NCBI GenBank assembly: GCA_951804945.1
Contig: OX638150.1
Location: 37,014,001 to 37,078,000, forward strand
Direction of reading: 5' to 3'
DNA from: Podarcis cretensis
Lineage: Eukaryota
DNA length: 64,000 bases
Below the pieces are notes generated by a model. It did not search any database, had not been told where the DNA came from, and was given only the letters and a program-made list of their open reading frames with translations. Numbering within the stretch: position 1 is the stretch's first letter; each line of letters starts with the position of its first letter. Both the position numbers and the translations under genes were made by a program. This document shows, piece by piece, positions 1,489 through 62,223 of the stretch.

Positions 1489-1619
1489 CTCATACGCCTG
1501 ACAATTCCTTCATGGGTTTTGTGTCTGAGGAGCTCAATGAAACAGAGAAGCAATTCATTAAATCCAACAAGGCTAACAACATGGCAGTGGTATATGGGAA
1601 AGAAGCCAGCATTTGGAAG
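1489..1619 (+). CDS. MGAT5B: MGAT5B internal coding exon (P)HTPDNSFMGFVSEELNETEKQFIKSNKANNMAVVYGKEASIWK
   Basis: Acceptor cttcgcag|CT, donor AAG|gtgggt; 131 nt (2 nt + 43 codons); peptide matches vertebrate GnT-Vb as recalled (HTPDNSFMGFVSEEL...YGKEASIWK). Confidence 0.96.
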
Positions 1620-1816
1620 GTGGGTAGCGAATAAAATAGTGGAACTTTTTAACGGTGTCAAAAGCATTTAATCACTCAACCATGGTCCAAAGTGTGCTAA
1701 ATGCTCTGTGGCTGCAATCTTATGCAAACTTATTTGGGAATACATCCAACTGAACTCTGTGGGACTTCTTTCAAGTAATTAGGTGTGGAGTGCATCTCTT
1801 ACAACATTTAACAAAT

Positions 1817-2030
1817 GGATGAGGAACCTGTGCCTCTCCCAATGGTTTTTTTGACTCCATCTCCCATCAGCTCTAGCCAGTGTGGCCAATGGTCAGAAAG
1901 GACTCTATTGTAATGACTGTAGTTTGTTTTAATAGATTTTAGCAGCAGCAGCAGCAGCAGCAGCAACATGATGGTGGTGCTGGTGCGAGTTGTAGTCCAA
2001 TAACAGTGGATGCCACAGGTTCCTCATCCC
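1817..2030. mobile_element. Degenerate hAT-type MITE containing a (CAG)n tract
   Basis: Inverted ends ggatgaggaacctgtg / cacaggttcctcatcc; actccatctcccatc and gagttgtagtcc core shared with 6180-6317. Confidence 0.65.
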
Positions 2031-2683
2031 AGACACAGCAGAGGACCATATGAAGAGTTATAGGTTTCATCCAAATAATTCTTTAACTTTCAGGACCAGT
2101 TTAGGGCTTTGATAGGTATATCCCGATATTTGCCTGGTTGCAAATGCAAAGGATGAGGGGCTTCTCTTTCACATAGAACTACACACACATCAACACACAC
2201 ACATCCTTTGTTTAAATGCCAAGTCCCACAGTGAGAGGACTAAGTGAGTGTTGTCACTCTATGTACTCTATCTACGGACCACTCTATATAAACATAAGCA
2301 TTTGAAAGCTTTTATGAGCTACTTAGCCTGTCCTCTTCATTCATCTCTGCTGCATTATTCCTTGCAGCAGCAAATAGTAATGATGGGCCCAAGAAAGCGT
2401 GGGGAAGGAACCATTGTGTTCATGTCATGCTATTTAAAAAGTGCTTTTAAGAACTTTAAAATGCTTATCATATATGGTTCTTCAACTCCCCTGTTGCCGA
2501 AGCTTCCCCAGTAATCATGATGCTACTCTGAAGTTCTGGGGATTGGATGAATTCGTGGAGGAGGAGGGGACAGGCATGAGCTACTGTCTGTGACAGTTAA
2601 ATGAATACCAGTGGCAGGATAGTTTGGGGTAGTTGAAAACAACCATACAGGAGGCTGAATTGCCTTTATGGCCTGCTTACACT

Positions 2684-2966
2684 GAGAGCCAGTGTGGTGT
2701 AGTGGTTAAGAGCGGTTGACTCGTAATCTGGGGAACCGGGTTCGCGTCTCCACTCCTCCACATGCAACTGCTGGGTGACCTTGGGCCAGTCACACTTCTC
2801 TGAAGTCTCTCAGCCCCACTCACCTCACAGAGTGTTTGTTGTGGGGGAGGAAGGGAAAGGAGAATGTTAGCCGCTTTGAGACTCCTTCGGGTAGTGATAA
2901 AGCAGGATATCAAATCCAAACTCCTCCTCCTCCTCCCCCTCCTCCTCCTCCTCCTCCTCTTCTTCT
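2684..2966 (+). mobile_element. Squam3-type tRNA-derived SINE, full length, (CTC/CTT)n tail
   Basis: GAGAGCCAGTGTGGTGTAGTGG A-box head, GGGTTCGCGTCTCC B-box-like segment, ends ggatatcaaatccaaactcctc... Confidence 0.85.
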
Positions 2967-3176
2967 ATTTGGAAGCACTGGGTTGTGCTCTGTTCAGAAA
3001 TGATGCTTGGCTAAATGAGACCTTGGTACAACCCAACAGAGCTTTCCTGAAGCTCTGTTGGTTCCTGGTTGCTTCAGAGCACTTCTGAGATCTTTTTAGT
3101 ATGTTGCCATTGATACAGAGGAACTAACTCTCATTCCTTCTTCCTTCTCTCTGTGTGCCCACCATGGGATTTCCAG

Positions 3177-3182
3177 CTGCAG
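3177..3182 (+). CDS. MGAT5B: Candidate 6-nt MGAT5B microexon CTGCAG (Leu-Gln)
   Basis: ttccag|CTGCAG|gtaaac; branch-point-like CTAAC at 3124-3128, pyrimidine tract 3129-3152, TGC at 3156-3158; phase 0/0 between ...IWK and GKEK..., where the long GnT-Vb isoform has LQ. Confidence 0.82.
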
Positions 3183-3264
3183 GTAAACAGAAAATCATTT
3201 TTAACTATGTGCTTTTTATGTGTATTATTTAGATTTGAATACCCATTTGCGCTGACAAAATGGA

Positions 3265-3582
3265 ATTTTATTTGAAGACTACATTGCAATGTGTACATGT
3301 ACAAAAACACATACACTAGTGTAAAGTATGCATATCAATGCATATAATCATGAAAATAATGTGGAACATGCAGTATATTAGGGTATATCACCTTGGAGGG
3401 GAAATGCATCTATTGGAGAAAACTGCATATAAAAATGTGCATGTCAGGAGAAGTTACGCTAAATTACTGGTGAATATTCTGAAGCGCTTAAAAAAAATCT
3501 GATATAAAAATGGGGGGAACTGAATTTAAGGTTGGAAAAATGAGAAACTGATAAAAATAAAAATTGACAAATTCACCCATCT
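3265..3582 (+). mobile_element. Unclassified AT-rich lacertid interspersed repeat (partial)
   Basis: Shares aactgaatttaag.ttggaaaaatgagaaactg...attgacaaattcacccatc with 13131-13560, 16633-17375 and 36908-37325. Confidence 0.7.
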
Positions 3583-6179
3583 TTGCCCCCCCCCCCCCCA
3601 CACACATATGGAGCCCACGCCCCCAAGTTCCAGTGTGTGCCTTCAAAGTAGAACACTTGAAACACAACAACTCTCATTTTTGAATCAAACCCAGGTGGTG
3701 AATGGCTTGGCTTCTTTCTTTTGCTGTTTTGTTTTCTTTGCATGTTGTTTCCTCTGCACGCTTCTGTTTTCCAGGGGGAAAGCACGTCAATTACCCCCTG
3801 AGTGTAGAAGCAAATCCTGCCTAGAGAATGCTTCCTCTTGCCCCCCCCCCCCCCCCGCACAGCTTTACTTGATGCAAACATTGTGCATCTCAAGTTATGG
3901 AAATCTCTTGTGCATCAACATGTGATTGTTCATCACACAGATTTCTATTCAGCAAACTGAAATATGTGCCATCAGGAGTGCAGTGGAGGGTTTTTAAATT
4001 ATCGCTTCCGCTAAGCAAGAACTCTATGCAGAAACCATAGGTTTTGTCTGAAGATGATTACAACAATACTCACCCAAACCATATTTGCTGGAACTTGTGA
4101 CACACTGTAGATCTATACAACTTCCTTATTCACTTTAGCATGCAAATGATTTGAAAGAAAGAATTAATGTACTATAAACACAAAAGCAATATCAAGTGGA
4201 TGTTCTCCAATGTAGCATCTGCTTGTGCAACATGGCTCCTCTTTTCTCTCCTCCCCTTCATACCCCCAAAATCAGCTCCAGACAACTGATGTGGGGCATT
4301 CAGGAAGGTGGTGGAGGGAGTAGAGAAATGTGACGTCCCATTGCACAATGTGCTTTCCATTGCAAAAGCAGGCAGACATCATATCCATCTATCCACACTA
4401 TGCATATCTCCCATTATTTTAACAAATGCTGTCTGTAATATTCATATCCATTCTAAGAAACTCACACACTCCATTTTATTCCTCTAAGTATAAACCCTGT
4501 TTTGTATTGCAAATGATTGCTTCAATGCGCTTATCTATCTGCCTTTAAAAAGTATAGCTTTATATATACTGGGCTCAGTAATCATTTGCAATACGAACCA
4601 CTTGCTGACAGCTCAAAGGTCACTTGCAGACTTACGTCCTTTGGCCACAGTTCCTCTACATAACCTTGTCTCATACATCCCACAGACTCTTACATGAGAG
4701 ACCGTACAGAAATAAGACGATTCCAAGCCCTCATGGAGGGCACTGGATGCTTCCAATTGGCACACTCAAAATGAATTTGCCCCTTTTGTTGATTTGCACA
4801 ATTTTTGTTTTGCTTGTGAGCTGGTGCACAATTTTTATTCTTTATTGTTTCCATCAGTTTCTGAAAACACCCTTGGACATGACTGTGCATTCCTTCCAGT
4901 CTCTGGTGTATTGTACATGAGCCCAAGTCATGATGTGACATGCCAGAGGCCTCCCACTATACAGGGCAAGACTTGGCACAGCCCAGATCTGTATGACAAG
5001 GCAAAGCAACTCTGTGCTTACATGAGGGGGTCCCATGTGAAGGTCCATTTTAAAGCCTGGCATTCCCATAATGGAATCTAAAACAGAAGCATCAGCAGAA
5101 TTCAGACTTGGATACTGGGCTTTATGAAAAATGTTCCCTACCCACATGAGCCAACTCAGTTTTGTTCCATCAAACATCTGACTGATCAACACAGCAGTTG
5201 GTGTGTGATGTTTGGCATGTGCAGAAAGTGCTGCACACTTCTTAGTGGTTTTACGCTTCAGCCACAATACCAAATGTGGTGGAAGAATTGAAACAGATCT
5301 TTAAGTGTATCAGCATCCCCCAGTGGCAGCAAAAGTTGCATCACTTCTCTAAGTGCTTGAGGCAGGTGTCTGCTGCAGACAGCACAGGGAGGATAAGCGA
5401 GAGCAAGGCTTGGCCATTAAAGTTCCCAGCCTTCTTTGTCTACTAAACCAGAGACCATACAGTAATTTCTGTGGCTGGGAAGAGCTTCCTCTTTAGGCTG
5501 GACTTCAATGAAGCCCAGGTCTCAATTGCTGTTTGTACATCTGCTCTCATCCCCAAGTTTAATTTGGTTGGTTTGTGTCTTCTAATGTTGAAAAGTGTGG
5601 AGAAATTGGGGGAAGAAGGGAGAACATTAAGCAGTCTGTTCTGCAAAGGACAATGCTGACCACAGCTGAATTCGAAGGGGAAGTTACTTCTCTTGTGCAG
5701 AATTTATGCTGGCAGGGAAAAGAGATCCATGCTTGGAAACATTGTGTGACATGTATTGATCTGCTAGCCTACTCATTTGATAGAGTGATAATGAAGTCCT
5801 TACCAGCTACGTGCAATTCTTAAAAGGCAACATCAAATGAGCTTCAGAGTTAATCAACCTAATGCGGGGCTCATTCCCAAAAGGAAACATGCCGGGAAGC
5901 TGCAAGATAACACCTAAAATATATGTGGAGAACCTTGGCCCAGTTTCATGCATGTGGGGGAGTCTGGAGGGAGAGAAGGAGCTCTCTACAAACCATCAGT
6001 TCAGCTCTTAGGCAACATCTCTTTTTCCCAGGAAAAAGAAGTTTCCCCACCTCTGATAGGACAACTAGTACCTGCTTCTAAAAATAGCATGCCAACCACA
6101 TAATTTGATCAGACAATAATCTTATTCCAAAGAGCAGGACCTCCCTTTAAGAACAGGATACCTTTTGAATGCTCTAAGG

Positions 6180-6317
6180 CAGTGGTTCTCAACCTGTGTG
6201 TCCCCAGATGTTGTTGGACTACAACTCCCATCATCCCTGAGCTCTGGCCTTGCTAGCTAGGGGTGATGGGAGTTGTAGTTCAACAGCATCTGGGGACCCA
6301 CAGGTTGAGAAAGGCTG
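6180..6317. mobile_element. hAT-type MITE (palindromic), 8-bp TSD CTCTAAGG
   Basis: TSD at 6172-6179 and 6318-6325; ends cagtggttctcaacctgtg / cacaggttgagaaaggctg. Confidence 0.92.
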
Positions 6318-6403
6318 CTCTAAGGGCATGGTAACATAATGTACTGGCATCACATTTTTTTTCTAACTGCTCAATGCACTTCATTTTAGATTGCTACTTA
6401 CAA

Positions 6404-6589
6404 CATAGGAGCCAACTCCTAGGGGCCGAGGTCCCTTCACCCCCCCAATAAAATATTTGAGGGGCCGTCCCTCCCCCATTTTGATGGGCATTGCCATTCA
6501 AATGATGTGCATGTGCCGCGTCTTGTGATCAGTTATGTGGAGCAGGGCTTACCTGCCCCCTCCATATTTTATTCAAGTTGGAACCCCTG
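6404..6589. mobile_element. hAT-type MITE, 8-bp TSD ACTTACAA
   Basis: TSD at 6396-6403 and 6590-6597; imperfect TIRs cataggagccaact / agttggaacccctg. Confidence 0.85.
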
Positions 6590-6735
6590 ACTTACAATAA
6601 CCTGTTTAGGTAGGCCAGTATTATCTCCATATTATAGAGGTGGTGGCTGAGACTGAGAGATGGAGCAGCTTGCCTAAGGCACACCCAGTATACTCATGCT
6701 TGGAGTGTGAATTTAAATCAGGCACATATCAGATA
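6590..6735 (-). mobile_element. Old CORE/MIR-like SINE fragment
   Basis: cttacaataacctg...aggtagg...attatctccat...ctgagactgagaga...ttgcctaaggcacaccca. Confidence 0.55.
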
Positions 6736-6933
6736 CCCTAATCATTATACTAGCTGATCTCCCATTGTCTCTGTCGGGGTACATTTTTATTTGCTTGCTT
6801 AATTGGGGAAAGGTTACCATCTGGATGAGCCATGACAAAATGTATGCAGCTGGACGGAATTTTATATGTCCTCACGAATTCTGAACTTTGTGACTGGCAA
6901 TCACGGATGAATTTCTTTCCTTTCTTTTCTCAG

Positions 6934-7089
6934 GGCAAAGAGAAGTTTCTAGCCATCCTGAACAAGTACATGGAGATCCACGGCACTGTTTATTACGAAA
7001 CACAGCGCCCGCCTGAAGTCCCAGCTTTTGTGAAGAATCATGGTCTCTTGCCACAACATGAGTTCCAGCAACTCCTTAGAAAAGCCAAG
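6934..7089 (+). CDS. MGAT5B: MGAT5B coding exon GKEKFLAILNKYMEIHGTVYYETQRPPEVPAFVKNHGLLPQHEFQQLLRKAK
   Basis: Acceptor tttcttttctcag|GGC, donor AAG|gtattt; 156 nt, 52 codons; GnT-V family peptide. Confidence 0.97.
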
Positions 7090-7425: not shown

Positions 7426-7665
7426 NNNNNNNNNNNNNNNNNNNNNNNNNNNNNNNNNNNNNNNNNNNNNNNNNNNNNNNNNNNNNNNNNNNNNNNNNNN
7501 NNNNNNNNNNNNNNNNNNNNNNNNNNNNNNNNNNNNNNNNNNNNNNNNNNNNNNNNNNNNNNNNNNNNNNNNNNNNNNNNNNNNNNNNNNNNNNNNNNNN
7601 NNNNNNNNNNNNNNNNNNNNNNNNNNNNNNNNNNNNNNNNNNNNNNNNNNNNNNNNNNNNNNNNN
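7426..7665. other. Assembly gap (240 N)
   Basis: N run, flanked by an L2 tail and simple repeats. Confidence 1.
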
Positions 7666-9802: not shown

Positions 9803-10665
9803 CATGTGGATGACACCCCATGTGGATACAGAGATTTATTGTATTTATTTTACCAGTGGAGCAACTGGGGCACTGCCTGTCTACTCTCAACCAGCCCCTC
9901 AGCTGTCCACTTTCTAATTTACAACAGCCAGTCGAGTGGCTAGCCCTGCCTGTCAGTTTCCTCCTCCTTAGTCTCAGAGTTGATTCTTTGTAGACCTCAG
10001 CAGGGAGGAGGATGGGAACAAGGCAAGAATGAGTTGGCTCTGCCTGCCATTGGCTCTGGTGCCACCTACTGCTAGTCCTCCTGCCTTCCACCCTACCAGT
10101 CCCAGTTGGCATCAGCCACTTTAATGTATTTTACAAAATGACAGGAACATGCTAAAGGATAAGAGACAAGCCCAATCCCAAATTCACCAATTTCAACTCC
10201 TATGACTGTCTAAATTAAAAATAATAAAAAAAAGGTTTTTAGCTCCACCCCTAGTTTCCTGGGCTAATTCAAATATTTTCATACAAAGGCAACAATATTT
10301 CTGAATAAAGAATATTGTTAAGTAGAAGAATGAAACTGCAACATGCTCAAAGACTATCGTTTGATATCTGCCATGTTCATTAAAATTATATGCAAATTGT
10401 TAATTAGTGACTACTGAAACATGCAAATGAGTAGAAGCTGTCTGGGCCACGTGTCCATTCAACTGTTGTCCTCTTAAAGGACACAGGTTGTTGGTACTGG
10501 ACTAATTGCGGGACTTTCAACCAACAGGTTAAAATGCCAAGCAAAGGACTGGTAGACCATTAACTCCCATGGCAAAGAACTGAAGGGTTAAACAAATAAC
10601 TGAAATAGCTTTAAAATAACGTGGTTGCCAAAGATGCCTGAAATATCTGAATTTTCTCTTTGCAG

Positions 10666-10812
10666 CTCTTCATTGGGTTTGGTTTCCCCTATGAGGGCCC
10701 CGCCCCCTTGGAAGCAATAGCCAATGGGTGTGTTTTCCTGCAGGCTCGTTTCAACCCACCCCACAGTTCACTCAATCATGAATTCTTCAGAGGGAAGCCT
10801 ACATCGAGAGAG
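10666..10812 (+). CDS. MGAT5B: MGAT5B coding exon LFIGFGFPYEGPAPLEAIANGCVFLQARFNPPHSSLNHEFFRGKPTSRE
   Basis: Acceptor tctctttgcag|CTC, donor GAG|gtaagt; 147 nt; conserved GT18 motif GFPYEGPAPLEAIANG; absent from the ORF track. Confidence 0.97.
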
Positions 10813-10882
10813 GTAAGTCTGTTCTGAAATTATGCAGCGAAGATCTTAGACCTGAGCCTAATTGATCTGGGTATGTCTAAAG

Positions 10883-12561: not shown

Positions 12562-12678
12562 GTACCCTCTCAGCATCCCTATGCAGAGGATTTTATAGGG
12601 AAACCCCATGTGTGGACAGTGGACTACAATAATTCAGAGGAATTTGAAGCTGCTATCAAAGTCATTATGAGGACCAAG
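12562..12678 (+). CDS. MGAT5B: MGAT5B coding exon VPSQHPYAEDFIGKPHVWTVDYNNSEEFEAAIKVIMRTK
   Basis: Acceptor tctgtattttag|GTA, donor AAG|gtaact; 117 nt; SQHPYAE-FIG-PHVWTVD motif. Confidence 0.97.
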
Positions 12679-13130
12679 GTAACTGCCAGCCAAGCCTCCT
12701 GAAACATTATTAGTCATAGAAATTGAGCCTTTTATTTCAATATTTTGCCTTAAAAATACCCAAGTGGGTGGATTCAACAAGGACAATGTCAGGTTGAGAA
12801 TGTGAGAATTTGCAGTCCATCTCAGGAAAATAAAGAAAAACATGACCTATTTCAGGTGTATTCTATCCCTGCCCCTACAAACTGTAGGACAGAAAGTCAG
12901 GCCATCTGGATTAGAAGGTGTTAATAAGTGAGTGAGCTATGTTTTGCTTTTACTTTCTTAACTTCTCCTTAAAGTTTCATTTTTAAAAATGTCACTTTCA
13001 ACAAACACAGTTAAAAATAAAAGCTTGGCATTTAGAATCTCAAGACATGGGAGTGTGTCCCTTATGTGACTCCCAAAACACTCTTGAGTGTTTCATGACT
13101 GTTTCCAACTTTATTTTAAGATGTACATAG

Positions 13131-13560
13131 AGGTGGGGGAGAAATTTGATTCAGTTCACATTTAAAGGCAAGTTTACTTGATCTGCACTTTCTGAAGCAA
13201 TGTGAGCCACAAAGACCTGTCCTTTGAAATTTTCACTTCTCTGAATTTTGCAATGCAGTTTCTCAGCCTATCCATATACAAAAACCCATATACTGTGGGA
13301 AAGTGTGCACAAAATTTGCACATATTCATGAAAATAACATGCAAGTATGCATTATATTAGGGGGAATTGCACTGCAGAAAAGGTGTCTGTTAGGCAAAAT
13401 TGCATACAAATATGTATATGTTCAGATAAATTTGCAAAAGAAAAGAAAAGAGGGCTTTTCGTGAAGACTTTAAAAAAAAGAAAACACATATGGGAGAACT
13501 GAAGACTGGAAAAAAATGAGAAGTGAAGACGAAACAGAACTGACAGATCCACCCATCCCT
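13131..13560 (+). mobile_element. Unclassified AT-rich lacertid interspersed repeat (near complete)
   Basis: gggggagaaatttgattcagttcacattt...ctgaattttgcaatgcag...tgacagatccacccatccct; multiple copies in this window. Confidence 0.75.
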
Positions 13561-26221: not shown

Positions 26222-28918
26222 TACAACCACCCTTTTGGTGAGTAATGGGAAAACAACTAAGCTGGTCCCGGTCTCTATGAAATTCAGAACCTTCATTGTG
26301 GAAGGCAGACAGCAAGCTGGGCACTCCCAAATAGGAATTTGGCTATAGTGGGCTTCTATGCAGATTTGTACAGGATGTTTTGTGTTCTCAAGTGCCCTAA
26401 CATTTAGAGTCTCTCCTTCTTCCCTCCACTCCAATGTTCTTTCCATAGGCCTGCTGGATTTAGTAGCTAATCATATCCCTCATTTAAATGCTAATCTCTC
26501 TCAGCAGCAGGGACCCATTTTACATACAGCTTGACTTTTCTGGTGCAGTAAAGCTTAAGCTCAAAATGTAAAATATCCAATGAGATTCCTCAGGGCTTTT
26601 TCTTCTTCTTTGGGGATAGTGGGGGGTGGGATAGGAAATAAAAGAATGATGATAGATGGAGAGATGAAACATTGCCTGTAAAGCTGGGAAATGGCCATTT
26701 ACTTCCTTTGTCTTTTTATTATTATCATTGGGGCAAGGGGAATAAGACTTCCGTTCAATCCCAGGCCAGAAGTAACCTTTTGTGCTGCCTGTCAGGGCCA
26801 GCCCAAGTCATTTTGCTGCCTGAAACAAAGGACAAATGCCACATACAGAAGCTGGTTGGACTGGTTGTTGAATCTTACTTCAGCAATGCAATGCAATAGG
26901 CAGGCAAGTTTACGGGGCACATGCATCTTGGTTCTCCAACAGAGGGGCATGACTAGGGGATGCGGGAGGAAAAACCAGAAGGGCCACTGCTGCTGTACCA
27001 CAACACTCCACCTCAGCACCTACCATCTGAGGCAATTGCTTCATTCTGCCTCATGGCAGGGCTGGCCACCATGCCTATCTGGGACTTCAGCTAAAAACTG
27101 CAGGAAATACTGCTCCAGGGTTGTGCAAGTAAAGGTAGGGGCCTTTACAAGCCACACTTCCAACTTCACCCTCACCCCAAATTTAATCTAAATCATTGGC
27201 TCCCCATAACCTTCTATAAACAGCACCTGGCAAGGGTCTGCCACAAGAAATGAGGGGACCGGGCTCTGTCCCCATTTAATCTGAGCACTGGGAATTTTGC
27301 ATATTATTTCCCCTTGTTGATTGTGCTGACTGCCAGGAAGCTTAATTCTTCCTCCTGCGGCCAGAACATTTGAAGCAAGGCCTCCTAGGCTCAACAGGCC
27401 AAAGGGGGCCCAGCTCAACATCCTGACATCACCCGTGTGATGTTGCATGATGTCTGGACATCATGAGAAGCCAGGGGGTGGAGCCAAACACCCTCTGAAC
27501 ATTGAGGGGACCTGGCCTCCTCAAAAAAACAACCCATGGGGGGCTGAAAGTATCTCGGCCCCTAGGGGCCGGCACCTATGCTCACAGGCCAATGTGTTTA
27601 GGAATACAGCCTAAGTCTATGCTGCATCTGAGAAAGAATGAATGTGAAAAATCAGCACAGTTCTTAGCCAGCTTCTAGAGATCAAATCCAGAAAAGCCCA
27701 ACATGGACATGCCTGTGTTCACAGTCTTAGTATCAAATGGGAAAAGAACAGGTGAGAGGGTGAAAGGAAGATGTAAGATCAGATACTTCTTAACTTCAAA
27801 GGAAATCTATCCTGTTGTCATCAGTCACTGCTAAGCTGCTTAAAAACCAAACTCCCTTAGTGTGATGGGTTTTATAGTTATTTCTTTGCTCTTCAGAAGA
27901 AGAACAGGCCTATCTAGAGCATACAGGGGTCTTTTGCTGGAAGCAGAGAAGATGCCATGCACTTTTAATCACTGAGCTTTAGTTTGATTCTTAATTGGCA
28001 TATTTTTAACCAACTTTGATCTTTTTTAAAAAAAGAGGGAGAGGGGAAAGAGAAAGGGAAGGCGGAAGCTCATTAGGAGCCACTTGTCCTGGTGAGCCCA
28101 TCTGTTGTTGGGTCTCTTTCCTTTCAAGATGAGGCTTCATCCACCTGTCTCCTGGTAGCAGATGGAGGCAGGCATCTGCTGGCATTGCCTGTTGTGAGTG
28201 TTTCTGACAGATCCATCAGGATGCTTGCCAGCATTCCTAAGGAGGAGAGGCTCATACACAAGGAAAGCTTTGCCGAGGAGCAAGCCTGAAGCCAAGTCAT
28301 GTGCGCACAGGCAGGCCCAGCTGAACAAGCCAGCAGTCTTGCGCACTTCAACAGCTTTGCACCAGAAAACAATTCTGGAGGGGTGAATTCATTCTGGTTG
28401 AAGTGATCTGAAGAATATTTGCATCCTTCTTTGTAACTCTTAATGGCAGGTGATGGCCTGCAGTTCTGGGGTTTTGGGGATTTAAAAATCTGATAACTGT
28501 CAGATTACTGACCACCTTGCCACTAGATTTCTAGATTTCCTATTGGAGGAAAAAAATGAATGGCTTTTCAGCTATCAAATCATGTGTTATCTGAATGGAT
28601 ATTCCCATGCTCTGGAGGTTAAATATTTGTTCATTGCACATTTTCCTTCCTTCTGGCATCTTAGTCCCCCCACATATGGTTTGCTGAGCTCTTCTGTCTT
28701 CCCAGATCCTTGCCAATAATTCAGAAGCCTGCAAAACTTGAGGAAGGCTGCAAATTAAGGACGTGTGATCAAATTTACAAATTTGCCTCTTTCTTCCAAT
28801 GCAACATGTTAGGCATGCAGATTACAAGATATTGGGTTTTTCACTCGACAGAAAGTGGTGATGGGGATAGCCTTCTTGCACTGATCCATGCCTATGCTGT
28901 GCTTTTCCCTTTCTCCAG

Positions 28919-28993
28919 GTTGATCCTTACCTGCCCTATGAATACACCTCTGAAGGGATGCTGGAGCGAATTCATGCCTACATTCAGTACCAG
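28919..28993 (+). CDS. MGAT5B: MGAT5B coding exon VDPYLPYEYTSEGMLERIHAYIQYQ
   Basis: Acceptor ttttccctttctccag|GTT, donor CAG|gtagtt; 75 nt, 25 codons. Confidence 0.96.
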
Positions 28994-33564: not shown

Positions 33565-33833
33565 GATTTCTGTGCCACCGCTGCTATGCCAGAGAAGTCC
33601 AGCAGCCACACTATGCAAAGCTCTGCAAGCCCCTTCAGCCTGCAGCCCAATTCCACGTACCTGGCCTGGTCTCACAATTCCAGCAGCAGCCCCCGTGCCT
33701 GGCCTCCAGTCAACTCCATGCAGGTGTGGATATCAGACGCTGGGCAGGCCTGCACCAGCACTTGTCAGCAGCATGGTTTGGTCTGTGAGCCCGAGTTCTT
33801 CAAGTTCATCAACAAGAAAGGAGTGTTTCAGCA
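33565..33833 (+). CDS. MGAT5B: MGAT5B coding exon DFCATAAMPEK...AWPPVNSMQVWISDAGQACTSTCQQHGLVCEPEFFKFINKKGVFQ(Q)
   Basis: Acceptor cttttcttctcggatag|GAT, donor CA|gtaagt; 269 nt, ends in phase 2; DFC...WPP and C-x3-C-x6-CEP pattern. Confidence 0.95.
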
Positions 33834-33892
33834 GTAAGTCTCTTCTCTCTCCCATCTTACCCTCATACACCCTGGAATCTCTTCTCTTCCTT

Positions 33893-34000
33893 GTGCTGTT
33901 TTTCTAGAAAAAGAGGTGCCGGAACTCACCCTGAACATCTCCCTTGTTCTCTTGGCAATGGTGCCCACCTGAAAGGTGCCGGAACTGAAAATAAGTCCCA
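33893..34000. mobile_element. Short hAT-like MITE with gaggtgccggaact repeats
   Basis: Two aggtgccggaact units; same family as the host element at 43290-43690. Confidence 0.7.
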
Positions 34001-35340: not shown

Positions 35341-35376
35341 TTTGTTTGTTTGTTTGTTTGTTTGTTTGTTTGTTTG
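35341..35376 (+). repeat. (TTTG)9 microsatellite forming the pyrimidine tract of the last exon acceptor
   Basis: Nine perfect TTTG units immediately before cttccaag|. Confidence 0.95.
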
Positions 35377-35384
35377 CTTCCAAG

Positions 35385-35583
35385 GCTCAACATTGTCTGT
35401 GACAGCACAGAGTCAGAGATGAATCACCTCTACCCAGCTGTGGCTGAAAATGTCCAGGAGTGCTACCTCCAGAAGGAACCTCTCTTATTCAGCTGTGCAG
35501 GATGCAATACCAAGTACCAGCGCCTCTGCCCCTGCCGCAACTACCGCAAAGGACAAGTGGCACTGTGTGGGGACTGCTTGTGA
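35385..35583 (+). CDS. MGAT5B: MGAT5B last coding exon LNIVCDSTESEMNHLYPAVAENVQECYLQKEPLLFSCAGCNTKYQRLCPCRNYRKGQVALCGDCL*
   Basis: Acceptor cttccaag|G completes the CA+G codon; LLFSCAG...RLCPCR...GQVALC..CL C-terminus; TGA at 35581-35583. Confidence 0.97.
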
Positions 35584-46333: not shown

Positions 46334-46465
46334 NNNNNNNNNNNNNNNNNNNNNNNNNNNNNNNNNNNNNNNNNNNNNNNNNNNNNNNNNNNNNNNNNNN
46401 NNNNNNNNNNNNNNNNNNNNNNNNNNNNNNNNNNNNNNNNNNNNNNNNNNNNNNNNNNNNNNNNN
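46334..46465. other. Assembly gap (132 N)
   Basis: N run. Confidence 1.
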
Positions 46466-62067: not shown

Positions 62068-62223
62068 NNNNNNNNNNNNNNNNNNNNNNNNNNNNNNNNN
62101 NNNNNNNNNNNNNNNNNNNNNNNNNNNNNNNNNNNNNNNNNNNNNNNNNNNNNNNNNNNNNNNNNNNNNNNNNNNNNNNNNNNNNNNNNNNNNNNNNNNN
62201 NNNNNNNNNNNNNNNNNNNNNNN
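62068..62223. other. Assembly gap (156 N)
   Basis: N run. Confidence 1.

What the first reader, a model, noticed from the sequence alone, without database searches (positions are those of the whole stretch)
3121..3190. Stand-alone 6-nt neural-type microexon (Leu-Gln) in MGAT5B
Seen: inside the 5.3-kb intron between ...ASIWK and GKEKF..., the sequence runs CTAAC (3124) - long CT tract - TGC (3156) - ttccag|CTGCAG|gtaaac, a frame-preserving 6-nt exon encoding LQ. TGCATG motifs lie downstream (3438, 3739). The six bases before the next exon's acceptor are TCTCAG (SQ) with no AG ahead of them, and the upstream donor is followed by GTGGGT, so LQ cannot arise here from an alternative splice site on either neighbour. 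Established (from memory): mammalian GnT-Vb has two isoforms differing by LQ at exactly IWK-LQ-GKEK; a UGC between the pyrimidine tract and the AG is the SRRM3/4 (nSR100) signature; TGCATG is the RBFOX site. Inference: an amniote-conserved, neurally regulated 2-residue switch next to the YGK motif of the catalytic domain. It is invisible to ORF and gene finders, and is preserved between two younger TE insertions (Squam3 ending ~210 nt upstream, AT-rich repeat ~80 nt downstream).
Basis: partly seen in the sequence, partly recalled or inferred. Interest (0 to 1): 0.8.

Follow-up and report, generated by a model that had tools for sequence, protein, structure and literature searches.

The report
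Conserved 6-base MGAT5B microexon (Leu-Gln)
The six bases CTGCAG at 3177-3182 are very probably a real alternative mini-exon that adds Leu-Gln to the brain glycosyltransferase MGAT5B, but protein models from fish to mammals, lizards included, already carry it, so it is a correct reading and not a new discovery.

Summary
In the 5,314-bp phase-0 intron between the MGAT5B exons 1491-1619 (...ASIWK) and 6934-7089 (GKEKF...) lies CTAAC, then a CT tract, then TGC, then ttccag|CTGCAG|gtaaac.

- **Not chance.** It is the only AG-N6-GT site in 128 kb (both strands) with a 40-nt AG-free, pyrimidine-rich upstream zone and a donor matching at least 7 of 9 positions. It is the only one of 21 such sites in the intron that codes LQ.
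- **Protein level.** IWK-LQ-GKEK occurs in 49 of 120 full-length MGAT5B cluster representatives, from teleosts and frogs to turtles, squamates, birds and mammals. Nine RefSeq isoform pairs differ by LQ alone: four lizards, a gecko, a snake, two turtles and a tinamou.
- **DNA level.** A bird-like contig (L001) carries ttccag|CTGCAG|gta 1,955 nt upstream of the same exon, with CTAAT, an AG-free tract and TGC at the same distance. Snake 813-aa isoforms translate the orthologous upstream intron (...DFQ-LQ).

So this is a real exon, conserved more widely than amniotes, and already annotated in related species.

SRRM3/4 control is an inference that fits the architecture but was not tested. The RBFOX part is weak: L001 has no GCATG, and one window site lies in a repeat. 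No RNA evidence for this species could be obtained.

The parts
1491..1619 (+). MGAT5B exon ending ...NMAVVYGKEASIWK, with donor AAG|GTGGGT
   Evidence: Pfam PF15024, E=4e-14. The frame and acceptor ttcgcag|CT were read. tblastn of lizard MGAT5B proteins confirms the exon.
3124..3128 (+). Branch-point-like CTAAC. The putative branch A is 3127, 49 nt before the AG.
   Evidence: Sequence. The aligned element in L001 is CTAAT at 603-607. This is a consensus match only, with no experimental mapping.
3129..3152 (+). CT-rich polypyrimidine tract at the start of an AG-free zone that runs to 3174
   Evidence: 78% pyrimidines over 3129-3174 and no AG between 3121 and 3175. TRF finds a TTCCTTC repeat at 3134-3148.
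3156..3158 (+). TGC (UGC in the RNA), lying between the pyrimidine tract and the 3' splice site, 17 nt before the AG
   Evidence: L001 has TGC at 650-652, 18 nt before its AG. Snakes have a Cys codon (TGY) at the same in-frame position. Searches give the literature on the motif's role.
3171..3176 (+). 3' splice site ttccag
   Evidence: It is identical in L001 667-672 and is implied by the snake residues ...F-Q before LQ.
3177..3182 (+). 6-nt microexon CTGCAG, coding Leu-Gln between IWK and GKEK
   Evidence: the unique site. Searches show LQ in orthologous proteins and in isoform pairs. One search shows the same hexamer in L001.
3183..3188 (+). 5' splice site CAG|gtaaac. Positions -3 to +4 match the consensus; +5 and +6 do not.
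   Evidence: L001 has gtactg, so only GTA is shared.
6934..7089 (+). MGAT5B exon GKEKFLAILNKYMEIHGTVYYETQ...RKAK, with acceptor ttttctcag and donor AAG|gtattt
   Evidence: Pfam PF15024, E=3.9e-17. It aligns to human GnT-V structures and is 100% identical to squamate MGAT5B.
3438..3443 (+). TGCATG, 256 nt downstream of the microexon donor. It lies inside a repeated element, so an RBFOX role is doubtful.
   Evidence: The surrounding 3297-3570 has diverged copies at 37163-36925 and 13273-13421. L001 has no GCATG.
3739..3744 (+). Second TGCATG, 557 nt downstream of the donor
   Evidence: The window-wide density is 0.44 per kb, so about 0.26 are expected in 600 nt.
2684..2959 (.). High-copy interspersed repeat (2684-2910) followed by a (CTC)13 microsatellite (2921-2959). 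It ends about 215 nt upstream of the microexon.
   Evidence: Depths of 12,000-255,000 in contigs of four other lizard runs. TRF result.

Best explanation
CTGCAG at 3177-3182 is the lizard copy of an old alternative 6-nt cassette exon of MGAT5B (GnT-IX/GnT-Vb).

Shown:
- When included, it adds Leu-Gln between ...YGKEASIWK and GKEKF.... When skipped, the frame is unchanged.
- The exon has its own 3' and 5' splice sites in the middle of a 5.3-kb intron.
- The same hexamer, with the same acceptor and a similar upstream block, is present in another sauropsid.
- Forms with and without LQ are both recorded in many vertebrates.

Inferred:
- Inclusion is probably helped by SRRM3/4 binding the UGC that sits between a distant branch point and pyrimidine tract and the AG. 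This is the usual way such tiny exons are recognised in neurons.
- The two residues lengthen the loop between the invariant strand MAVVYGK and the following helix KEKFLAILNKY in the second Rossmann-like domain, which is the donor-binding half of the GT-B fold. The effect on enzyme activity is unknown.
For: - **Sequence and uniqueness:**
- **Gene identity:**
- **LQ at this exact junction:** 49 of 120 full-length representatives, from teleosts to mammals.
- **Isoform pairs:** nine RefSeq pairs from single genes are identical except for LQ: lizards P0361/P0363, P0370/P0367, P0372/P0353 and P0371/P0287; gecko P0347/P0352; snake P0270/P0335; turtles P0378/P0381 and P0377/P0387; tinamou P0285/P0419.
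- **Spliced transcript contigs outside any annotation also carry LQ:** P0309 (Logan, 626 aa on a 2,293-nt contig) and P0223 (JGI, 737 aa on a 3,588-nt contig).
- **LQ does not come from the neighbouring exons in other lineages either:** donor read-through gives V[GSR] and acceptor read-through gives [FPSL]Q, while annotated LQ stays constant. For example, macaque has FQ in one model and LQ in the NCBI isoforms.
- **Orthologous DNA:** L001 has CTAAT, an AG-free tract, TGC, then ttccag|CTGCAG|gta, 1,955 nt upstream of the identical GKEKF exon. Snake 813-aa isoforms read ...SLCANMDFQ-LQ, against the window's in-frame ...SVCPPWDFQ-LQ.
- **Architecture matches published SRRM3/4 microexon features:** a UGC lies between the branch point and the AG in 74-79% of dependent microexons, and the branch point to 3' splice site distance has a median of 45-47 nt against 34 nt.
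- **Protein context:** strand 460-466, loop 467-475 containing L473 and Q474, helix 476-486. Y464, G465, K466, W471, K472, G475 and K476 are invariant. GnT-V domain 2 spans G425-Y605.
Against: - **No RNA evidence from this species.** The four runs laid covered only repeats and gave zero depth on both flanking exons.
- **This species' own protein was not retrieved.** The nearest proteins, from lacertids, differ at 31-35 of about 406 residues.
- **The donor is only moderate.** It is GTAAAC here and weaker (GTACTG) in L001.
- **Statistical support from DNA alone is modest.** By blastn the 15-nt shared block has E=0.04 on its own.
- **A UGC in a 46-nt stretch is expected by chance about half the time.** Only its conserved position adds weight.
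- **The structural model has low confidence** (mean pLDDT 48; residues 466-473 are below 50).
Confidence: 0.85

Rival explanations
1. The exon is real but is not an SRRM3/4- or RBFOX-controlled neural switch. It is included at some fixed or otherwise regulated level wherever MGAT5B is expressed, and its UGC and distant branch point are only general aids to recognising a tiny exon.
For: - No expression data could be obtained.
- GCATG is absent from the whole 3.3-kb L001 contig, and the nearer window site lies in a repeat.
- UGC is not strictly required for SRRM4 response, and a sizeable share of dynamic brain microexons lack it.
- MGAT5B did not appear in the supplements of two microexon studies that could be searched.
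Against: - The exon has the full published architecture of SRRM3/4-dependent microexons: 6 nt, frame-preserving, UGC 17-18 nt before the AG at a conserved position, a 49-67 nt AG-free zone between branch point and AG, and deep conservation.
- The gene is expressed almost only in brain.
Confidence: 0.35
2. The hexamer is a chance splice-like motif (a pseudo-exon) that this species does not use. The LQ form is either absent here or encoded elsewhere.
For: No RNA evidence from this species. The donor deviates from consensus at +5 and +6. blastn E is only 0.04 for the shared 15-mer.
Against: - It is the only LQ-coding AG-N6-GT site in the intron and the only one with a strong acceptor context in 128 kb.
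- The identical hexamer and acceptor occur at the orthologous place in L001. About 0.03 LQ-coding AG-N6-GT sites are expected by chance in 2.6 kb.
- The snake isoforms end in the same DFQ-LQ.
- Related lizards have RefSeq pairs with and without LQ.
Confidence: 0.05
3. LQ arises from an alternative 5' or 3' splice site of a neighbouring exon and not from a separate exon.
For: In some other species the 6 nt before the GKEKF exon happen to read LQ, because a pyrimidine tract is followed by CAG (for example ...LLLLQ|GKEKF in P0009-P0016).
Against: - In this window the 6 nt after the donor are GTGGGT (VG) followed by AG. The 6 nt before the acceptor are TCTCAG (SQ) preceded by TT.
- Deposited models that extend a neighbouring exon give VG, VS, FQ, PQ or SQ, not LQ.
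Confidence: 0.01

Closest known systems
The annotated alternative LQ exon of vertebrate MGAT5B (GnT-IX/GnT-Vb). Examples are the RefSeq isoform pairs XP_034963850.2/XP_034963851.2, XP_028572875.1/XP_028572876.1 (Podarcis muralis) and XP_044309821.1/XP_044309822.1 (Varanus).
   Same: Same gene, same junction (IWK|GKEK) and same two residues. The flanking exons are 95-100% identical at the protein level.
   Different: Nothing of substance. The window is simply another squamate's copy.
SRRM4/nSR100-dependent neuronal microexons, for example the 6-nt TAF1 microexon 34' (PMC6948980)
   Same: A 6-nt frame-preserving exon, deeply conserved, with a UGC between the pyrimidine tract and the AG and a long distance from branch point to AG.
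   Different: Dependence on SRRM4 and neuron-specific inclusion are demonstrated for TAF1 and are only inferred here. No paper found names an MGAT5B microexon.
Human GnT-V (MGAT5), crystal structures 5ZIB, 5ZIC and 6YJQ-6YJV
   Same: GT18 family with a GT-B fold. The exon after the microexon aligns to GnT-V chain positions 347-395 of 5ZIB, inside middle domain 2 (G425-Y605).
   Different: GnT-V reads ...YGKVDSFWK-NKKIYL with no two-residue insert (P0130). Whether MGAT5 has any equivalent exon was not examined.

Membership tests
MGAT5B (GT18 beta-1,6-GlcNAc transferase B) | Glyco_transf_18 domain | tested here: met
   PF15024 with E=4e-14 and 3.9e-17 on the two flanking exons, above the curated cut-off.
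MGAT5B (GT18 beta-1,6-GlcNAc transferase B) | Orthology to MGAT5B and not to MGAT5 | tested here: met
   The exons are 95-100% identical to proteins named MGAT5B in squamates, against about 50% identity to human GnT-V.
SRRM3/4-dependent neural microexon | Length 3-27 nt, frame-preserving | tested here: met
   6 nt, in a phase-0 intron, coding LQ with no stop.
SRRM3/4-dependent neural microexon | UGC between the branch point or pyrimidine tract and the AG | tested here: met
   TGC at 3156-3158, 17 nt before the AG. L001 has TGC 18 nt before its AG. Criterion taken.
SRRM3/4-dependent neural microexon | Long distance from branch point to AG, with an AG-free zone | tested here: inconclusive
   The AG-free zone is shown: 3121-3174 in the window and 603-670 in L001. 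The branch point is only a consensus match (CTAAC or CTAAT), 49 nt and 66 nt from the AG. No mapping was done.
SRRM3/4-dependent neural microexon | Higher inclusion in neurons, and dependence on SRRM3/4 | not testable with these tools
   The only reads call gave zero depth on the exons. No tissue-resolved data were available.
SRRM3/4-dependent neural microexon | Deep conservation of the exon across vertebrates | tested here: met
   LQ is present from teleosts to mammals, and the same hexamer and acceptor are present in L001.
RBFOX-enhanced exon | Conserved (U)GCAUG in the downstream intron | tested here: not met
   The window has TGCATG at +256 (inside a repeat) and at +557. L001 has no GCATG in 3.3 kb. 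Only one other species was compared.

The most novel reading that the evidence does not exclude
The LQ microexon is a neuron-specific, SRRM3/4-driven switch. By lengthening the loop after the invariant YGK strand of the donor-binding Rossmann domain, it changes GnT-IX kinetics or its preference between O-mannose and N-glycan acceptors. Neurons and glia would then run different versions of the brain's O-mannose branching enzyme. No paper in the searchable library addresses this.
Probability: 0.2. Interest if true: 0.45.

Novelty: already known. Interest (0 to 1): 0.2.

Why it matters
The finding itself is ordinary. It is a correct by-eye detection of a microexon that RefSeq already annotates in related lizards, snakes, turtles, birds and mammals.

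Its practical value is for annotation quality. Many deposited MGAT5B models mis-place the two residues as VG, VS, FQ, PQ or SQ by stretching a neighbouring exon. One example is the representative of a 462-member bird cluster.

The open biological question is what the LQ insert does to GnT-IX and whether its inclusion is specific to a cell type. That appears unstudied in the literature that could be searched, and it is modestly interesting given the enzyme's roles in remyelination, glioma and nodes of Ranvier.

Tried and rejected
- **Reads.** The 'RNA?' runs that held 5-7% of the words turned out to hold only the interspersed repeats at 2684-2910 and 6170-6320.
- **Third word search, with the Gekko fragment P0008.** It returned only a few fragments spanning the junction, all in skip form or genomic read-throughs. 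It yielded no squamate transcript contigs.
- **Paper searches and supplement searches.** Nothing on an MGAT5B microexon. The Cell 2014 microexon paper is not held.
- **AlphaFold2 model of the LQ isoform.** Mean pLDDT was 48, so it is usable only for local secondary structure.
- **Origin from an alternative splice site on a neighbour.** Rejected from the sequence.
- **A recursive-splicing site.** Considered and dropped. The intron is short, and the six bases are demonstrably coding in orthologues.
- **RBFOX enhancer.** Not supported by the one cross-species comparison.
- **Joined spliced model.** The exons were searched one by one by reference, and database proteins were used for the junction.
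- **Mammalian entries.** Primate and other mammalian protein entries were used only as listed database proteins. No contig taken for human was fetched.

Full report
**1. Observation**

The sequence reads exactly as described:
- CTAAC at 3124-3128
- a CT-rich tract at 3129-3152
- TGC at 3156-3158
- ttccag at 3171-3176
- CTGCAG at 3177-3182
- gtaaac at 3183-3188
- TGCATG at 3438 and 3739

The flanking exons were located by translation. One ends ...NMAVVYGKEASIWK at 1619 with donor GTGGGT. The next begins GKEKFLAILNKY... at 6934 after ...ttttctcag. The intron 1620-6933 is 5,314 bp and lies between complete codons, so a 6-nt exon coding Leu-Gln preserves the frame.

Neither neighbour can yield LQ:
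- The 6 nt after the donor read Val-Gly and are followed by AG, not GT.
- The 6 nt before the acceptor read Ser-Gln and are preceded by TT, not AG.

**2. Chance**

The intron holds 21 AG-N6-GT sites, and only the one at 3177 codes LQ. I then required a 40-nt AG-free zone, at least 70% pyrimidines upstream and a donor matching at least 7 of 9 consensus positions. Under those conditions 3177 is the only site in the entire 64-kb window on either strand.

**3. The gene**

Both flanking exons match Pfam Glyco_transf_18 (PF15024) at adjoining profile positions, 245-288 and 289-340. The downstream exon aligns to human GnT-V crystal structures at about 50% identity.

The closest database proteins are named alpha-1,6-mannosylglycoprotein 6-beta-N-acetylglucosaminyltransferase B. 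Further exons lie at 10663-10815, 12562-12681, 28916-28993, 33565-33915 and 35374-35580.

The window is a squamate. It is closest to lacertid proteins, with 31-35 mismatches in about 406 aligned residues, but is identical to none of those retrieved.

**4. LQ at the protein level**

The full-database search returned a 792-aa mammalian MGAT5B (P0121) with IWK-LQ-GKEK. I used that protein to collect full-length orthologues and parsed the junction in each. Of the 120 cluster representatives:

| Junction | Count |
|---|---|
| LQ | 49 |
| no insert | 49 |
| VG, FQ, VQ, PQ, VS, MQ or VR | 20 |
| could not be parsed (other insertions) | 2 |

LQ occurs in placentals, a marsupial, platypus, turtles, snakes, lizards, birds, five frogs and about ten teleosts. 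The exon is therefore older than amniotes.

Nine RefSeq isoform pairs from single genes are identical apart from LQ:
- lizards P0361/P0363, P0370/P0367 (Podarcis muralis), P0372/P0353 (Varanus) and P0371/P0287 (Rhineura)
- a gecko, P0347/P0352
- the snake Ahaetulla, P0270/P0335
- two turtle pairs, P0378/P0381 and P0377/P0387
- a tinamou, P0285/P0419

Two spliced contigs from outside any annotation pipeline also carry LQ. These are P0309 (Logan, 626 aa on 2,293 nt) and P0223 (JGI, 737 aa on 3,588 nt).

The odd inserts are best read as annotation artefacts. VG, VS and VR equal read-through of the donor; compare the genomic ORFs ending IWKVS... and IWKVR.... FQ, PQ and SQ equal the six bases before the acceptor; compare the genomic ORFs ...LFQ|GKEKF and ...PPQ|GKERF. 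In macaque one model has FQ while the NCBI isoforms have LQ. That shows LQ does not come from the acceptor in macaque either.

**5. DNA-level conservation**

(a) *Snake isoforms.* Snake 813-aa isoforms insert EVNLASSCFSLCANMDFQLQ at the junction. This is a 60-nt exon that uses an acceptor 54 nt upstream of the microexon's acceptor and the same donor. The window translated in the same frame reads TNSHSFFLLSVCPPWDFQLQ. So gat-ttc-cag-CTG-CAG is shared, and a Cys codon sits where the window has TGC.

(b) *A metagenome contig.* A metagenome scan with the downstream exon returned L001. It is 3,326 nt with 57% GC. It looks avian, which is my inference. Its GKEKF exon at 2634-2789 is 100% identical at the protein level. 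Exactly one LQ-coding AG-N6-GT site lies upstream of that exon, at 673-678: ttccag|CTGCAG|gtactg. It is preceded by CTAAT at 603-607, an AG-free stretch and TGC at 650-652.

The alignment shares GGA.CTAA.TCTCA.T.CTTC, then GTGC, then a 15-nt exact TTCCAGCTGCAGGTA. Downstream of GTA there is no similarity. By blastn the 15-mer alone reaches only E=0.04, and nothing else in the two introns aligns convincingly. The weight comes from the coincidence of position, coding content and splice signals. About 0.03 LQ-coding AG-N6-GT sites are expected by chance in 2.6 kb.

**6. RNA evidence in this species**

None could be obtained. The runs ranked as possible RNA holders shared only interspersed repeats with the window, at 2684-2910 and 6170-6320. 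Depth on both exons was zero. This says nothing for or against inclusion. The joined exon-exon sequences were not built or searched.

**7. Regulation (inference)**

Published work describes SRRM3/4-dependent microexons as follows:
- A UGC lies between the branch point and the AG in 74-79% of cases, at a position that matters for the response.
- The stretch from branch point to 3' splice site is extended, with a median of 45-47 nt against 34 nt.

Here the putative branch A at 3127 is 49 nt from the AG, the interval is AG-free and 78% pyrimidine, and UGC sits 17 nt before the AG. In L001 it sits 18 nt before the AG. The architecture therefore fits.

Two cautions apply. A UGC in such a stretch is common by chance, and the cited work shows it is neither necessary nor sufficient.

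The RBFOX part is weak:
- TGCATG at +256 lies in an element with diverged copies elsewhere in the window.
- Two sites in 600 nt against 0.26 expected is only mildly unusual.
- L001 has no GCATG at all.

MGAT5B is reported as almost exclusively brain-expressed. Any splicing choice would therefore be between neural cell types.

**8. Protein context**

In an alignment of 52 orthologues, Y464, G465, K466, W471, K472, G475 and K476 are invariant.

A low-confidence AlphaFold2 model of the lizard LQ isoform (mean pLDDT 48) gives a strand at 460-466 (MAVVYGK), a loop at 467-475 containing L473 and Q474, and a helix at 476-486.

By chain index the junction corresponds to about residue 450-461 of human GnT-V. 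That lies inside middle domain 2 (G425-Y605), the second Rossmann fold, which carries the donor-binding E526. The numbering offset is my inference from chain lengths.

The insert thus lengthens a strand-to-helix loop in the donor-binding half of the enzyme. No data bear on its effect.

**9. Novelty**

The exon is already annotated in related species, and the LQ isoform difference is on record across vertebrates. What I could not find is any paper on the exon's regulation or function (supplements).

Its claims of invisibility to gene finders and of conservation limited to amniotes need correcting. Its regulatory reading remains a reasonable, untested hypothesis. Earlier notes of this scan do not mention this exon.

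Noticed in passing
window 3111-3182; proteins P0332, P0333, P0334, P0338, P0342: Snakes have a longer version of the exon: 60 nt coding EVNLASSCFSLCANMDFQLQ, in 813-aa isoforms. It uses an acceptor 54 nt upstream of the microexon's acceptor and shares the microexon's donor. In the lizard window the same frame is open back to a TGA at 3111-3113. The only upstream AG (3117-3118) would give a 64-nt, frame-shifting exon, so the long form looks specific to snakes.
   Followed up: partly
protein junction IWK|GKEK in P0294, P0261, P0256, P0216, P0227, P0293, P0364, P0366 and others: Many deposited MGAT5B models carry two wrong residues at this junction: VG, VS or VR from the donor, and FQ, PQ, VQ or SQ from the acceptor. 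They seem to arise when homology-based predictors stretch a neighbouring exon to fit a template that contains LQ. The representative of a 462-member bird cluster has VG.
   Followed up: partly
window 2684-2910 and 6170-6320: Two very high-copy interspersed repeats, probably SINE-like, with summed contig depths of 5,000-250,000 in runs of four other lizard species. These repeats, not the gene, explain why those runs shared 5-7% of the words.
   Followed up: partly
P0122 (UniRef A0AAV2KJG4, 441 aa): A more divergent MGAT5B-like protein has Leu-Glu instead of Leu-Gln at the same junction (MWQ-LE-GKDRF). This may be a variant of the microexon in a fish paralogue. Sturgeon 'B-like' (P0126) and lamprey (P0128) models have no insert.
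   Followed up: no
P0374, P0382 (sea turtles, 803 aa); P0269 (dog, 849 aa): Other models extend the GKEKF exon upstream by 27 nt (LIFFAFLPQ) or 171 nt. These are either alternative 3' splice sites or read-through artefacts in the same intron.
   Followed up: no
window 7426-7665, 46334-46465, 62068-62223: Three runs of N (240, 132 and 156 nt). The first lies about 340 nt downstream of the GKEKF exon.
   Followed up: no
L001 3215-3326: The end of the metagenome contig carries a 'cacagaatcccagaat...' type repeat, and the contig is 57% GC. From memory this looks like bird DNA. The organism was not identified.
   Followed up: no
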